Of a stretch of 64,000 nt of DNA, positions 58,197 through 64,000 are shown one piece after another (position 1 is the stretch's first letter; every line of letters starts with the position of its first letter). The stretch covers positions 80,228,001 through 80,292,000 of the forward strand of contig NC_083276.1 of NCBI RefSeq assembly GCF_963506605.1. The letters run 5' to 3'. Source of the stretch: Zootoca vivipara (taxonomy: Eukaryota). The notes under the pieces were generated by a model, which was given only the letters and a program-made list of their open reading frames with translations, searched no databases and was not told where the DNA came from. The position numbers were made by a program, and so were the translations under genes.

Positions 58197-58760
58197 GAGA
58201 AGTGAGAGATATTTCCAGAGTGCTTTACCTTTCCCATCCTCTCCACCCCCACCCAGTGTATTTTCCTTTCCGAAAAGAGCGCCCTTCTCTTCAAGTTGAG
58301 TATCATCCCTCTTGTAGATGCGGGTTAGGTAAGGTTGATTTCCCTTATGCTCTGGAAGACTTTCCATGGCATAATCTCACACTTCAGTGAGTGGAATGGT
58401 CATGCATATATCTTAAGCTACCAGGGCAAATACATATTGTATTGTGTTCTCCATGCAGTATGTTTTGCTAGATGAGATTTTTCAAAAATAAAGGAATAGT
58501 CTGCTCCCTGATTGACTTGCACTTTGAGTACATGCTTGAGCTGTTTATTTTCTAACTTAGTAGATTTATAGTATATTCAGCTTGGCTCTGAATAACTATG
58601 TGTCTCAGGCCAACTATGCAACTTTGTCAGGGTACTTTTCCTTATTCCTTCTACAGTACTGTGACCAGTGGATTATTTCTGTAGGTTAGAACCAGATGCC
58701 CTGTTAAATGTGTCAAGGGCCCAGTCCATATATCGAAATAAGTCATGGTTACTATGAACT

Positions 58761-58988
58761 TTTGCCACCTCATGAGAAGAGAAGACTCCCTGGAAAAGAC
58801 CCTGGTGTTGGGAAAGATTGAGGGCACAAGGAGAAGGGGACGACAGAGGATGAGATGGTTGGACAGTGTTCTCGAAGCTACGAACATGAGTCTGGCCAAA
58901 CTGCGGGAGGCAGTGGAAGACAGGAGTGCCTGGCGTGCTCTGGTCCATGGGGTCACGAAGAGTCGGACACGACTAAACAACAACAACA
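58761..58988 (+). mobile_element. BovB/RTE 3' fragment in the CPSF7 3'UTR intron
   Basis: [20 protein letters not shown]; (CAA)n tail; TSD ACT(A/G)TGAACT. Confidence 0.88.
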
Positions 58989-60027
58989 ACTGTGAACTAG
59001 TAGCATGCTAATGCAAACTGCTCAGTAGCTGCCAGTTTGCTGCTGCCCTACCACGAAGGACAGCAAAAATCTGAACAAGACACAATCCACAAGTCAAAGT
59101 TTGTTCTTGATTTACTGACCATTGTTTAAGGGAAATAAGCTTTGATTCCAATGTGCATGTTAATGACAAGCCAATCTCCATGGTTTATTGCTCCCATCCA
59201 TGCAATGGGAGGAGAAGCAAAGTGGGAGTGCTTGGGCAGTTTTATTTTTAAGTTTGTGCAGAAAGCTACTTTTGCCCTTCCCGACTGTATTGATTGTGTC
59301 TGAGGCTGTACCTCTGCAAACATTAAATTCAGATTCAGACATCATTAGTGTGTTTAATTTATGGAATCCCTGCTGAGCCCAGCTGTGACTCACAGACGTA
59401 ACTATCTCTTTGAAGAGTTTTTACCGGCTCTGTGTTCATGTTTGCGGGTCTTGTTTGCCTCTTTGTAAAGCAAACCAATAAACCCAGCAAGAAATCCAAC
59501 TGACTCATGTTCCTTTGAATTCTTAGACCTACCTTGTAAGGGAGAGGCATAATGGAGAGAAATTGTAAATAAATAAATATCACATCTTTTATTTCAAGAG
59601 GGGCATCACAGACTAGTATTGGTAGAATAATTTCTCTAACTTGAAGATTAGTCAATTTTTTTCAGTGGCAATCTGCCTTGGGTGCCCTGGAATAAAAAGT
59701 GGAGTAGAAACTGCAAAAATAAGTAAAACATAGCCGCCTTGCTATCTCACCACCCTCTTTACTTCATGAATGCAACTAGCACCTAAGGTGGTGATGAGAG
59801 TCTGACTTGAGAGTAAGTTTGATTCAGTGGGTAAAGTGCTGAGTCTAGTCCAGTTCAGCCATGAGCTAGACAAGCCTGTAGCCTTGGTTCCCTATTGCAT
59901 GTGGAAATAACTGTGATTTCCCCATGGAGTTAACAGTCCAGGGTTAATGGGCAAAATTCTCAACAAACCTCTTTGAAAGTGCTATGGAATTTACAAGTGC
60001 TTACAATTTTGTTTTGTCTCTTTCTAG

Positions 60028-61995
60028 GAGCATTGGAAGCATTCAGTGTTTTTATGGACTCTTATCTCCTCTCCTTAATCAAGACTAAAATATGGAGGCT
60101 TCTCCACCCCCTCCTTCCCACTGCCCTCTGCTCTTTCCAGACCCCTTGGAAGGGACTTTGCCTGCAGAACTCCATCTGGCACACCATGGTATTGGGACCT
60201 GAGCTCTGCCTGTGTGCTGTCACTGCTGCTTGATGGAGAAGCACTGAATGACTTGGAGGGTGGGAGGGGTTGGTTGTCTGAGCCACCGTGACCAGGGGGC
60301 CACTTCAATCCATGGATTCTTGGACCCAAAGAGAATGGTGCTTTCCACAGAGGTTTCTCGCCTCTTTCCTTTCTGTGGCTTTTTTAGGAGCACTGGGGAA
60401 GGAGTCCATCCAGCTCATCTCCTGCGAGAAAAACTGGTGCTTCAGCACAGAATGAGATGTCTGACCCTATTCTCCCCGGAACTCGTGTCCACGGTCCACA
60501 CTGCATTGTTTTCTTAGGCATCGAAGCATCCATTCCTCCTTAAATCTGATCCTTTTTCCAAAGCAGGTTCAGTCTCGCCCTCCAGCACCGTTGTACACAG
60601 CTTAGAAAACAGTATTTCCCTGCTACGATGGAAGGCAGGCTGGCTGCTTCTTTGGGTCACCCCTCTTCTCCTTTCCTCCTTCAGTTGCGGGAAAATGTCA
60701 CCTCCTTTCTACCTGGCTTCTTCTAGAGGGGCCTGCGTTGGTCAACCGGCTCACAACGTTGAGTCTCCCTTAAAAAATAGATCTGGCTACTGCAGGTCCG
60801 CTTTCCACTGATTTGCTAACTATTTTCCTCGCTTTGTTTCATGCAATAGCTGCTCCAGTTGTAACTTCTGATGTAAACCTTTGTTTCTGGGGCCAGCCCC
60901 TCCCAGATTGCCGCCTTCCTTGTTGTAGAGGAAGTGTTGTAAATGGAGACCATAGAATGGAAAGGGGCAAAGTCAACCTAGGGCTACCTGGAAGTTACCG
61001 AATGCAGCACACCCTGAGCATTTTTAAAATTCTATGTGATGTACCTGTTGAACGTGTTGATTTAAGGTCCAGAGCTTTCCTTGGCCCCAGCCTCCTTTTA
61101 AAAGGAGTTTCTTTTTGGAGTGGTTCACTCATGAGTTTGCTTCAGATAGCACCATACCTCACTGATCTCTGGCATGCCAGTCTAGGGAGACGATTAGAGA
61201 CAGTGGGAGGCGTCTCTTCACACCACCATATTTAGCTGTGTTATGTAATCGTAAGTAGGGTTTCTGGAGCCACTCTAGTCACCAGGCAGCCCTTTGAGAC
61301 CAGTTGCAGCAAAACCTGTGTGTTCGGAACATGGGACAAAAGCACCTGCAGAGTTCTTGATTAAACTCTCATCTTTGAGTTGTAACCCTTTGGGTGTTCA
61401 TTTTCAGCTTTCATTGCTCCATCCTAGCCTGAGCACCCAGTTACTTTAAATCATGGTAACACGTTACACCCTGGAATATGTAGTCTCCAGCAACTGGATC
61501 TCGGTAGTGAGGCCAAGTATCTGTTGTGTTCATGAACACTTAATGTGATTGGTCAGCTGCATGGTGAAGCCTCCCTTGTAGAAGGACCCTGTTTTGTCTC
61601 ACAGAACAATGTTGTGGCCTAAGGAGGAGGGGGTGGTGTCTGGCAAAGGATGTTCTTGTGTGATGTGGCACCTCCTTTTGTACTGTTGATCACAGAGGTG
61701 CTCAACTCTAAATGTGTTTTTTAAAAAATAAAACGGGAAAGTTGTATAAGCAATGGAGTGACAACTTAAACTGTAAAATATATAAAAATTGATGATTGGA
61801 AAAGTTGCTTTTTACATAATGGACATTTTTAGTTTGTTTTGAAATAATGGAAGTAAGAAAAGAAAGAAATGAAACAACAGAAAACATAGCCTTGGTTCCT
61901 CTCAACTCACCCATCCCTGTTCTTCGTGATTTGATTTGTTTGTCTTTTTCTGATAGGTTGGAAATTGTGTAATAAACTTGATGATATTGTCAATC
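60028..61995 (+). other. CPSF7: CPSF7 terminal non-coding exon (3'UTR)
   Basis: acceptor TTTTGTCTCTTTCTAG ending at 60027; AATAAA at 61727 and at 61971, the latter followed by a GT/T-rich tract. Confidence 0.7.
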
Positions 61996-62951
61996 TTTTA
62001 TACTGCATTGTATGGCTTCTTTTCATTTTGTAACGATTTTGAATGCTGGGTGAGCTGTTTTCTAGAATCTCCACTAAATATGAGCGGGGGGGGGGCGGTG
62101 TGCGGGGAGACCCTGATATGGAAAAGAAGATGGATAGACAAGACAGGTGCCATATTTTGGCTGGGTAGTAGCCCTTGTACAACCATAGCTTTATGTATTA
62201 CTAAATTAGTTCCAAAACCACTTTATGTACACATATTAAAATGATTTTTAAAAAGCTATCTCTCAGTCATCTCCATTTAAAGGGGAGTGTCTGGTAGCAA
62301 ACCAAGGAAAGATTTGAGACCCTTGAGAATGTCTGCCAGTGTGTAATCAGTACACTGAATGAAGATTCGATGCTCAGCATCATTTTAAGTAGCTCCTTTA
62401 AAAAATATTTGCTCTGGAAAACATGAACAAAAATCACAGGTTTCATAAAAAGGGATAAGCGTTATGCTGAGCAGAGATAGGGAAATGAAGCCATGATGGA
62501 AACAGATGAAACTCAAACACTTTGAAAGGGGATTGTGCCTTTCACGTGAAATTGAATATTACAGGCAAGGATGCAGGGAAATATAATAGTATATAAGGGA
62601 TTTCTGTCTATGGCAGGAAAAGGTTCAGTTACAAGAATATTGTCCTGATTGCTAGTGGTATTCAGTGAAATGCTTCTAGGAATCATCTGCTTGCACAGAT
62701 GGTGTGTGTTTCACCTTCCTGAAGGTTTGTCATAAAAGGGCATTTGCCTGTGACTGGCGGATGAGGTGGTAGTACTTTCAGAATGCAGCTTGAGTGGTGA
62801 ACAGTCTGTGGGAGGGGCTTAATGCTGAGTGGGTGGGTTTACCTGGTTGCTAGGTGATGATTGTGATCTAAGGGACCAGGATTAATCTCAAATGAGTCCA
62901 GATAAGTGATCTGATGAATGGGTACCATTCAAGTCTCTTGTTATTCTCACC

Positions 62952-63257
62952 ATGACATACTCATTAGAATTTGGCCTTGTTAATGCGGCCAACCGGTACC
63001 TGACTGCTGAACCTTTCCGTTTCCAGGTGGCAGCCACAGGCAAGCAACTGAAGCCTCGCCAGTTGTGGATACTGCAGTTTGTGAGCCCACAGGGAGCTGG
63101 GGCAGCTGGCCCAGGAGAAGGAGCTGGCCAAAAGCTTCACCTGATCAGTGCACTGAAACGCTACTTGGCGGCTGACGCAAATGGAAAAGTCACCTGTGAC
63201 CAGGACAAACCAGGGCCTCAGACCTTCTTTCTCTTGCATCAGTATCCAGATGGCAAG
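62952..63257 (+). CDS. Fascin-like protein, coding exon 1
   Basis: ACCATG; LEFGLVNAANRYLTAEPFRFQV..LK.RQLW..RYLAADANGKVTC is fascin beta-trefoil 1; donor AAG|GTG. Confidence 0.88.
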
Positions 63258-63903
63258 GTGCTCTCTCTCACCCAGGCACAAGCATCCTATCTCTCAAGTG
63301 TAGCTTTATGTCCGATATTATTGGGCTGGAATTCTGGACAAAGAGGGCTAGGCAGAAATGAGGGCAGGTTTGAGCTCAACTTGCAGACTAGTTTGCTGTG
63401 GTGAGAAGCAGTGTCTTTTCTTAGTGTGCAAGTTTTTAGATTCTTGCGGGTAAGTCCAGGCAGCAAATTCCTGCACTCCAGTGCTGTAAAGTACATCAGG
63501 AAGAGTGCAAAATGTCCCTGGACACCCCCCCCCCCATGGTCTCCTTGGGAAGCCAGTCACGTGAGCCAAAGCTCTTTGCCCCTGTTGGCCAAACAGTATG
63601 ATAGTCAGCCACTATGGGCTGAAGGGGAGAAAATGTGTCTGAATAGCTTATTTGAGTCCCTGTGCTAAGAGTTGCCTGGTGTATCCTTCAAGGTGCCCTA
63701 GCCACTTCCCACCCACAACTGGAAACAACTGTAGCACAATGGAACTTGGGTGATCATGGCAACTCCATAAGCCCAAAGGTGTAACGTAATTGGTGTAATG
63801 ATACCTGAGTTTTTTCTGCCATGTTCTTTGCTCTCACTGAGAGTGTTCCTGCTTTTCTGGTCTTGGGCAATGTAGCTGACCAGACATCCTTCCCTCCCTG
63901 CAG

Positions 63904-64000
63904 GTGTCCTTGCAAAATGAACAGTCCAAGCGCTACCTGGGTGGAGCAGAGGAGAATGTCACTTGCTTTGCCCAAGCTGCCAGCGAAACCGAAAAGTGGA
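63904..64000 (+). CDS. Fascin-like protein, coding exon 2 (runs off the window)
   Basis: acceptor CCCTCCCTGCAG; VSLQNEQSKRYLGGAEENVTCFAQAASETEKW aligns to FSCN1 [32 protein letters not shown]; phase 0 matches exon 1. Confidence 0.88.
   Translation, partial: MSLQNEQSKRYLGGAEENVTCFAQAASETEKW

What the first reader, a model, noticed from the sequence alone, without database searches (positions are those of the whole stretch)
62952..64000. Divergent fascin paralog at a non-fascin locus, with an unusual intron position
Seen in sequence: two intact, phase-matched exons encoding fascin beta-trefoil 1, starting about 1 kb after the CPSF7 poly(A) signal. Recalled knowledge: mammalian FSCN1 and FSCN2 sit beside ACTB and ACTG1 and encode this whole region in one large first exon; FSCN3 has a different sequence and intron position; the human gene next to CPSF7 is TMEM216. 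Here a phase-0 intron (63258-63903) splits ...PDGK|VSLQ..., and a G/A-rich loop (SPQGAGAAGPGEGAGQ) is expanded. Inference: a fourth fascin lineage absent from mammals, and intron-bearing, so not a simple retrocopy.
Basis: partly seen in the sequence, partly recalled or inferred. Interest (0 to 1): 0.8.

Follow-up and report, generated by a model that had tools for sequence, protein, structure and literature searches.

The report
Lizard gene of an overlooked fascin clade
The window ends in the first two exons of a real, conserved lizard gene for an actin-bundling fascin; it belongs to an old vertebrate fascin branch that genome pipelines label only "fascin-like", and I could not test whether that branch is separate from mammalian FSCN3.

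Summary
Exon 1 (62952-63257, 102 codons), a phase-0 GT-AG intron (63258-63903) and exon 2 (63904 to the window end) encode fascin beta-trefoil 1. They match human fascin-1 residues 11-100 and 102-132 in order. The gene starts about 1 kb downstream of a verified CPSF7.

Exon 1 is 101/102 identical to the Lacerta agilis RefSeq protein "fascin-like". Relatives occur in more than 20 squamates, turtles, alligator, the frog Ascaphus, coelacanth, and as two copies in sharks, rays and chimaera. In a quick ML tree they form one fully supported clade on a long stem, outside FSCN1 and FSCN2. The intron after DGK recurs in relatives, whereas fish fscn2 has one uninterrupted first exon of 275 codons. The G/A-rich loop is an insertion specific to reptiles.

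"Fourth lineage absent from mammals" stays unproven. No FSCN3 sequence could be obtained, so orthology to FSCN3 is untested.

The gene is already in databases but absent from the papers I could search, which count three vertebrate fascins. The scan noted this same locus in overlapping windows of this genome, and on no other DNA. Interest is moderate.

The parts
62952..63257 (+). Coding exon 1 of the fascin-like gene: Met1 to Lys102, most of beta-trefoil 1.
   Evidence: ORF and sequence. Pfam Fascin E=7.6e-10. Human fascin-1 residues 11-100, E=9e-18. 101/102 identical to Lacerta agilis 'fascin-like' P0152.
63258..63903 (+). Intron 1: 646 nt, GT...CAG, phase 0, between K102 and V103.
   Evidence: Sequence. 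Genomic ORFs of relatives (P0001, P0002, P0003, P0004, P0007) match up to ...DGK and then diverge into unrelated sequence. Spliced models (P0005, P0006, P0152) read DGK-VSLQ.
63904..64000 (+). Start of coding exon 2 (V103 to W134 plus one base), the end of beta-trefoil 1. It runs off the window.
   Evidence: Human fascin-1 residues 102-132, E=2e-6. Pfam Fascin profile positions 76-106. 30/32 identical to P0152 in the alignment. The tools print the first GTG codon as M, which is an artefact of translation.
63084..63131 (+). G/A-rich surface loop SPQGAGAAGPGEGAGQ (residues 45-60), an insertion relative to other fascins.
   Evidence: Gap of 9-11 residues against fascin-1. Present in all squamate, turtle and alligator members; absent in frog, coelacanth, shark and chimaera members. 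pLDDT is below 50 at residues 47-52 of the orthologue model.
63045..63047 (+). Codon CAA (Gln32) at the position of fascin-1 Ser39, the protein kinase C switch.
   Evidence: Residue-by-residue alignment to PDB fascin-1 (query 4 = chain 11). Neighbouring basic residues are kept: K22->R15, K41->K34, K43->R36.
61990..62951 (+). Intergenic stretch between the CPSF7 3' end and the fascin ATG. The promoter and 5'UTR are presumed to lie here; there is no CpG island.
   Evidence: GC is 0.35-0.49 in 200-nt windows. No transcript data, so the TSS is unknown. This is inference only.

Best explanation
The stretch is the 5' end (start codon, exon 1, intron 1, start of exon 2) of a functional single-copy gene of a lacertid lizard. 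The gene is the orthologue of the proteins that RefSeq and Ensembl call 'fascin-like'.

Shown on the near-identical Lacerta agilis orthologue: the full protein is a canonical fascin, with four tandem beta-trefoils superposable on human fascin-1.

Inferred: it cross-links parallel actin filaments as a monomer, through the same actin-binding surfaces as fascin-1. In trefoil 1 the basic residues are kept (R15, K34, R36). The Ser39 phospho-switch is Gln here, so this fascin cannot be switched off by PKC at that site. It also carries a flexible G/A-rich loop specific to reptiles.

In evolutionary terms it belongs to an old jawed-vertebrate fascin clade, on a long stem outside FSCN1 and FSCN2. The clade is kept in cartilaginous fishes (two copies), coelacanth, Ascaphus, turtles, crocodilians and squamates. 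It was not seen in birds, teleosts, other amphibians or mammals. The clade has extra introns in the N-terminal half.

Whether mammalian FSCN3 is a separate branch or this clade's fast-evolving mammalian member was not testable here. I lean towards separate, on recalled sequence only.
For: - Fascin identity and exon order.
- Orthologue: 99% identical in exon 1.
- Clade membership and taxa, with source names.
- Quick ML tree of 80 rows: this clade SH-aLRT 100 on a stem of 0.88; FSCN1 100; FSCN2 99; the window's exon 1 sits next to Lacerta agilis.
- Constraint: Lacerta against python 87%, skink 84%, gecko 83%, which is as conserved as FSCN1 within squamates (87-89%). Intact 487-517 aa models exist in many species.
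- Intron conserved in relatives.
- fscn2 first exon of 275 uninterrupted codons.
- Four Pfam Fascin stretches in P0152, E=9e-49.
- AF2 model pLDDT 91.6, pTM 0.88.
- Foldseek to human fascin-1: TM 0.81-0.93, 35% identity.
- Ser39->Gln and retained basic residues.
Against: - No transcript evidence.
- Only 134 codons lie in the window. The rest of the gene was judged from the orthologue of another species, not from this genome.
- The tree is a 'quick' search with SH-aLRT only. The careful tree and AU tests were lost with the script machine.
- No FSCN3 row is in any analysis.
- Actin bundling is inferred from fold and conserved residues, not measured.
Confidence: 0.82

Rival explanations
1. The clade is simply FSCN3. 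The lizard gene would be the slowly evolving non-mammalian orthologue of testis fascin FSCN3, which in mammals moved to the ARF5-PAX4 neighbourhood and diverged fast. Vertebrates would then have three fascin lineages, not four.
For: - The distributions seen here are complementary. Clade members were found in sharks, coelacanth, a frog and reptiles but in no mammal. All 40 listed FSCN3 papers (of 106 found) concern mammals, apart from one oyster study.
- The Callorhinchus member is named 'fascin-3' in nr.
- Both are the divergent fascins: this clade is 36-39% identical to FSCN1, and FSCN3 is 27-29% identical (PMC9174856; PMC8616296).
- Osteichthyans show one gene per species, and the two shark copies group together (97). 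So the clade itself shows no sign of two ancient sublineages.
- Recalled only: FSCN3 has 7 exons against 5 in FSCN1 and FSCN2, and this clade also has extra introns.
Against: - RefSeq does not call any member fascin-3 by orthology; it uses 'fascin-like'.
- The exon 1 search read every one of 1.84 billion representative proteins. It found FSCN1, FSCN2 and many invertebrate fascins, but nothing that reads like FSCN3.
- Recalled only, not tested: human FSCN3 keeps the Trp after the DG[KR] position and the C-terminal WE[FY]. Every clade member, sharks included, has Val and F[HRL][YF] there. That would require two multi-nucleotide reversals if FSCN3 arose within the clade.
Confidence: 0.3
2. In this species the gene is a decaying or silent relic. 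The two exons are intact only by chance, or the damage lies downstream.
For: No RNA evidence could be obtained. Only 134 codons are visible in the window.
Against: - 101/102 identity with the Lacerta agilis protein.
- The start codon, the splice signals and every codion read are intact.
- The family is constrained across squamates, at 83-87% identity over the full length.
- Another first-stage note calls the rest of the gene intact (s1-850071); I did not check this.
Confidence: 0.05
3. It is a recent lineage-specific duplicate or retrocopy of FSCN1 or FSCN2 that landed next to CPSF7.
For: It lies at a locus without an actin neighbour, and the best Swiss-Prot-style name is plain 'fascin'.
Against: - Only 35-36% identity to the same lineage's FSCN1.
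- The clade includes cartilaginous fishes and sits outside FSCN1 and FSCN2 with full support.
- It carries an intron that fscn2 lacks.
Confidence: 0.02

Closest known systems
Fascin-1 (FSCN1; human structures 1DFC, 3LLP, 8VO5)
   Same: Four beta-trefoil architecture. The orthologue model superposes at TM 0.81-0.93. Trefoil 1 is collinear. The basic residues of actin-binding site 1 in trefoil 1 are kept.
   Different: Only 35-36% identity. A different clade. It lies next to CPSF7 rather than ACTB. There is an extra phase-0 intron inside trefoil 1. Ser39 is Gln. It has a G/A-rich loop insertion, Val in place of the Trp after DG[KR], and a C-terminal FHF in place of WEY.
Fascin-2 (FSCN2, retina and hair-cell fascin)
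   Same: Same family and domain order. It shares the intron near ...VSxRxG (about residue 270): fish fscn2 ORFs break there, and Callorhinchus isoforms of this clade diverge there.
   Different: 36% identity to chicken FSCN2. A separate clade (99). fscn2 has no intron in the first 275 codons.
Fascin-3 (FSCN3, mammalian testis fascin)
   Same: Both are the divergent members of the family, and neither lies beside an actin gene. It may be the nearest relative or even the orthologue.
   Different: Not compared here, because no sequence was available. The literature places FSCN3 in mammals, beside ARF5 and PAX4 (PMC3759438), at 27-29% identity to FSCN1. This clade is less diverged (36-39%).
'Fascin-like' proteins of sharks, rays and chimaera (two paralogues per species)
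   Same: Same clade (100). Same DG[KR]-V signature and the same C-terminal F-x-[YF]. 41-45% identity to the lizard protein.
   Different: There are two copies, 56% identical to each other, that group together (97). They lack the G/A-rich insertion. One copy keeps a Ser at the Ser39 position.

Membership tests
Fascin family (Pfam PF06268 proteins) | Fascin-type beta-trefoil sequence | tested here: met
   Window exon 1 scores 39.3 bits against a cut-off of 23.1. Exon 2 continues the same profile. The PDB fascin-1 match is E=9e-18.
Fascin family (Pfam PF06268 proteins) | Four tandem beta-trefoils in one chain of about 490 residues | tested here: met
   Tested on the orthologue P0152, which is 99% identical in exon 1, not on this genome. 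It has four Pfam stretches. The AF2 model has pLDDT 91.6 and matches fascin-1 at TM 0.81-0.93.
Fascin family (Pfam PF06268 proteins) | Basic residues of actin-binding site 1 in trefoil 1 (fascin-1 K22, K41, K43) | tested here: met
   R15, K34 and R36 by alignment. Which residues bind actin comes from published fascin-1 work, recalled from memory.
Fascin family (Pfam PF06268 proteins) | PKC-regulated Ser39 | tested here: not met
   Gln32 (CAA, 63045-63047) aligns with Ser39. Sauropsid members have Q or V there; the frog and one shark copy keep S. This is a regulatory feature, not a condition of membership.
Fascin family (Pfam PF06268 proteins) | Bundles F-actin | not testable with these tools
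   Needs a recombinant protein and a sedimentation or TIRF assay.
FSCN1 orthologues | Falls inside the FSCN1 clade and lies next to ACTB | tested here: not met
   The FSCN1 clade (100) excludes it. The same lizard family has a separate FSCN1 (P0204, P0205). The upstream neighbour is CPSF7.
FSCN2 orthologues | Falls inside the FSCN2 clade and has a single first exon of about 275 codons | tested here: not met
   The FSCN2 clade (99) excludes it. An intron follows codon 102 here, against none before codon 275 in fish fscn2.
FSCN3 orthologues | Groups with mammalian FSCN3 in a tree and shares its intron positions and neighbourhood | not tested
Processed retrocopy | Intronless copy of a parent mRNA | tested here: not met
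   A 646-nt GT-AG intron lies at a position conserved in lizards, snakes and turtles.

The most novel reading that the evidence does not exclude
Jawed vertebrates ancestrally had four fascin genes. The fourth diverged from FSCN1/FSCN2 (and from FSCN3) before sharks and bony vertebrates split. It survives beside CPSF7 in non-avian reptiles, and elsewhere in cartilaginous fishes, coelacanth and a basal frog. It was lost independently in mammals, birds, teleosts and most amphibians. In sauropsids it would be a fascin freed from the Ser39 (and probably Ser274) phospho-switch, with a new flexible G/A-rich loop, which would suggest a constitutively active bundler with its own tissue role.
Probability: 0.5. 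Interest if true: 0.6.

Novelty: new member of a known kind. Interest (0 to 1): 0.45.

Why it matters
Reviews and primary papers state that vertebrates have three fascins (PMC9174856, PMC4996939, PMC8616296). The searchable literature holds no description of this clade: 'fascin-like' retrieves only plant, fungal and invertebrate uses.

If the clade is distinct from FSCN3, the family history needs revising to four ancestral genes with lineage-specific losses. Reptiles and sharks would then carry an unstudied actin bundler that lacks the classical PKC switch.

If the clade is instead the orthologue of FSCN3, it supplies the slowly evolving ancestral form of a mammalian testis protein whose function is still unclear (dispensable in mice, according to PMC10046292). 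It would also date FSCN3 to the base of jawed vertebrates.

Either way this is a gene-family refinement, not a new mechanism.

Tried and rejected
- **RNA evidence.** The look-up of sequencing runs found one organism holding all the exon 1 words, and two raw RNA runs of it. Splicing and expression therefore remain untested.
- **Careful tree and AU tests.** These were for X+FSCN1, X+FSCN2 and ChA or ChB with the osteichthyan members. The script machine failed, so only the quick tree stands.
- **FSCN3 sequence.** Not among the 122 hits of the exhaustive exon 1 search, nor in the listed hits of the two full-length word searches. The ESM Atlas gives names only and did not discriminate.
- **Literature.** Two fascin evolution and structure papers are not held. 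The one supplement look-up was empty.
- **Possibly human sequences.** P0020 and P0138 (JGI metagenome 'hypothetical proteins') look like mammalian, possibly human, FSCN1. They appear only in the look-up and were left out of all alignments and trees.
- **Rejected readings.** Retrocopy (there is an intron), FSCN1 or FSCN2 orthologue (tree), and a chance ORF (E-values and collinearity).

Full report
**What is in the sequence**

From 62952 an ATG (A at -3) opens a 306-nt exon of exactly 102 codons, ending ...YPDGK at 63257. GT follows at 63258. After 646 nt, a pyrimidine-rich tract and CAG end at 63903. The frame resumes at 63904 with VSLQNEQSKRYLGGAEENVTCFAQAASETEKW and runs off the window.

Pfam's Fascin domain matches exon 1 over profile positions 1-71 (E=7.6e-10, above the gathering score) and exon 2 over positions 76-106. 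Against the PDB the two exons match human fascin-1 residues 11-100 (E=9e-18) and 102-132 (E=2e-6), in order and abutting.

The tools print the first codon of exon 2 (GTG) as M, which is an artefact.

**Neighbourhood**

The upstream + strand gene is CPSF7. Its RRM exon hits the PDB CPSF7 chain at E=1e-21, against 4e-4 for CPSF6, and the RSLD domain is present. An AATAAA lies about 980 nt before the fascin ATG; whether it is the signal used is untested. The intergenic stretch has no CpG island, with GC of 0.35-0.49.

First-stage notes on overlapping windows say that the gene continues for about 7.8 kb and that TMEM216-TMEM138 lie about 11.6 kb beyond the window end. I could not read that DNA.

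**Whose gene it is**

An exhaustive HMMER scan of 1.84 billion representative proteins with exon 1 gave six strong hits, at 58-99% identity. It then dropped sharply to lamprey fascin and shark 'fascin-like' at 46-48%, followed by FSCN1, FSCN2 and invertebrate fascins.

The source names show that the strong hits are turtle and cobra 'fascin-like' proteins, plus unnamed genomic ORFs. Word searches with a full-length turtle member and with a shark/frog profile recovered the rest of the family:
- more than 20 squamates, including Lacerta agilis, Podarcis, Anolis, Varanus, pythons, vipers, geckos and skinks;
- several turtles;
- Alligator;
- the frog Ascaphus truei;
- the coelacanth;
- two paralogues per species in sharks, rays and Callorhinchus.

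Exon 1 of the window is 101/102 identical to the Lacerta agilis RefSeq protein, so the window comes from a lacertid. It is 35% identical to that family's own FSCN1.

No bird, teleost, bichir, salamander, caecilian, Xenopus or mammalian member appeared, although FSCN1 or FSCN2 of several of those groups did. For birds the absence is meaningful, because alligator and turtle members are 70% identical to each other. For mammals it says little, because FSCN3 would be too diverged for a word index.

**Phylogeny**

I built a quick IQ-TREE (LG+C20+F+G4) of 80 rows.
- All these proteins, and the window's exon 1, fall in one clade with SH-aLRT 100, on a stem of 0.88 substitutions per site.
- FSCN1 (100) and FSCN2 (99) are separate clades. 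They group with each other (92) and with the lamprey fascins (86).
- Inside the clade the branching follows the species tree: frog, then turtles plus alligator, then squamates.
- The two chondrichthyan paralogues group together (97). This points to a duplication within cartilaginous fishes rather than to two ancient sublineages.

The careful tree and AU tests were lost when the script machine failed.

**Constraint**

Full-length identities of the Lacerta protein are 87% to a python, 84% to a skink and 83% to a gecko. That is comparable to FSCN1 within squamates (87-89%). Identity then falls to 58-61% for alligator and turtle, 50% for frog and 41-45% for sharks, whereas FSCN1 stays above 80% out to the coelacanth. 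The gene is therefore under purifying selection but evolves faster than FSCN1 at depth.

**The intron**

Genomic ORFs from related species (P0001-P0004, P0007) match through ...DGK and then read into unrelated sequence. Spliced models read DGK-VSLQ. The intron position is thus shared by lizards, snakes and turtles.

By contrast, nine genomic ORFs of teleost fscn2 run uninterrupted from residue 1 to 275 and break at ...VS[VI][KR]Q|G. That gives a tool-based confirmation that FSCN2 has one large first exon. FSCN1 is reported to have 5 exons (PMC8616296).

Isoform comparison in Callorhinchus and Narcine suggests further introns in this clade near residue 175 and near 266-269, the latter at the fscn2 position. 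The 510-aa Lacerta model carries an extra segment at exactly the residue-175 site. That segment has pLDDT below 50, so it is probably retained intron or an alternative exon.

**Protein features**

The orthologue has four Pfam Fascin stretches. Its AlphaFold model (pLDDT 91.6, pTM 0.88) superposes on human fascin-1 at TM 0.81-0.93.

In the window's exon 1 the basic residues corresponding to fascin-1 K22, K41 and K43 are R15, K34 and R36. Ser39 is Gln32. In the orthologue the residue aligned with Ser274 is Cys.

The G/A-rich loop is present in all squamate, turtle and alligator members and absent in frog, coelacanth and cartilaginous fishes. It is therefore a sauropsid insertion. It is predicted to be flexible. 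Lamprey fascin has an independent expansion at the same loop.

The clade also has two signatures: Val instead of the Trp after DG[KR], and a C-terminal F-x-[YF] instead of WE[YF].

**Mechanism**

Shown: fascin sequence, fold (on the orthologue), conserved trefoil-1 basic residues, and the missing Ser39.

Inferred: a monomeric cross-linker of parallel actin filaments that is not regulated by PKC at the classical site. Tissue and role are unknown, because expression could not be examined.

**The open question**

For orthology to FSCN3:
- the distributions are complementary, and the FSCN3 literature is mammalian;
- the Callorhinchus protein is named 'fascin-3';
- there is one gene per bony-vertebrate species.

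Against orthology:
- RefSeq's orthology-based naming does not assign FSCN3 to any member;
- from my own recollection of the human FSCN3 sequence (a lead, not a test), FSCN3 retains the two Trp positions that every clade member, sharks included, has lost.

I put about 0.5 on a truly separate fourth lineage and about 0.3 on FSCN3 orthology. The rest is left to unresolved arrangements.

**Known or new**

The gene is in public annotation under a placeholder name, so the sequence is not new. The papers I could search state that vertebrates have three fascins, and none describes this clade.

I file it as a new member of a known kind, of moderate interest. The scan noted the same locus in overlapping windows of this genome, and found no look-alike in other genomes.

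Noticed in passing
proteins P0166/P0182, P0178/P0133, P0170/P0181, P0172/P0186, P0169/P0194: Sharks, rays and the chimaera each carry two paralogues of this fascin clade, 56% identical within a species. The two group together in the tree (SH-aLRT 97). This suggests a duplication at the base of cartilaginous fishes.
   Followed up: partly
P0152 residues 177-200 (Lacerta agilis orthologue; beyond the window): The 510-aa RefSeq model has a 16-24 residue insertion after ...YYDFR that the 494-aa models of other squamates lack. It has pLDDT below 50 and sits where shark isoforms indicate an intron. It is likely retained intron or an alternative exon in the annotation.
   Followed up: partly
window 58745-59011, + strand: An 88-aa ORF (…[48 protein letters not shown]…) lies downstream of the last CPSF7 coding exon. 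From memory it looks like the conserved tail of a squamate retroelement, which fits a lizard genome. I did not test this.
   Followed up: no
alignment A2, columns 140-165: Lamprey fascin (P0131, P0008) has its own alanine/glycine-rich expansion at the same trefoil-1 loop where sauropsid members carry the G/A insertion. This loop seems to tolerate repeated expansion.
   Followed up: no
They include the AATAAA taken as the CPSF7 poly(A) signal.
   Followed up: no
proteins P0020, P0138 (JGI metagenome records): These are mammalian-type FSCN1 sequences with a frameshifted C-terminal half, filed as metagenome 'hypothetical proteins'. They are probably host, possibly human, contamination, and were left out of all comparisons.
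   Followed up: no
P0152 residue aligned with fascin-1 Ser274: In the Lacerta orthologue the second known fascin phosphosite, Ser274, aligns with Cys (…KFICCRPG…). Both classical regulatory serines are therefore absent in the squamate protein. This site lies beyond the window.
   Followed up: partly
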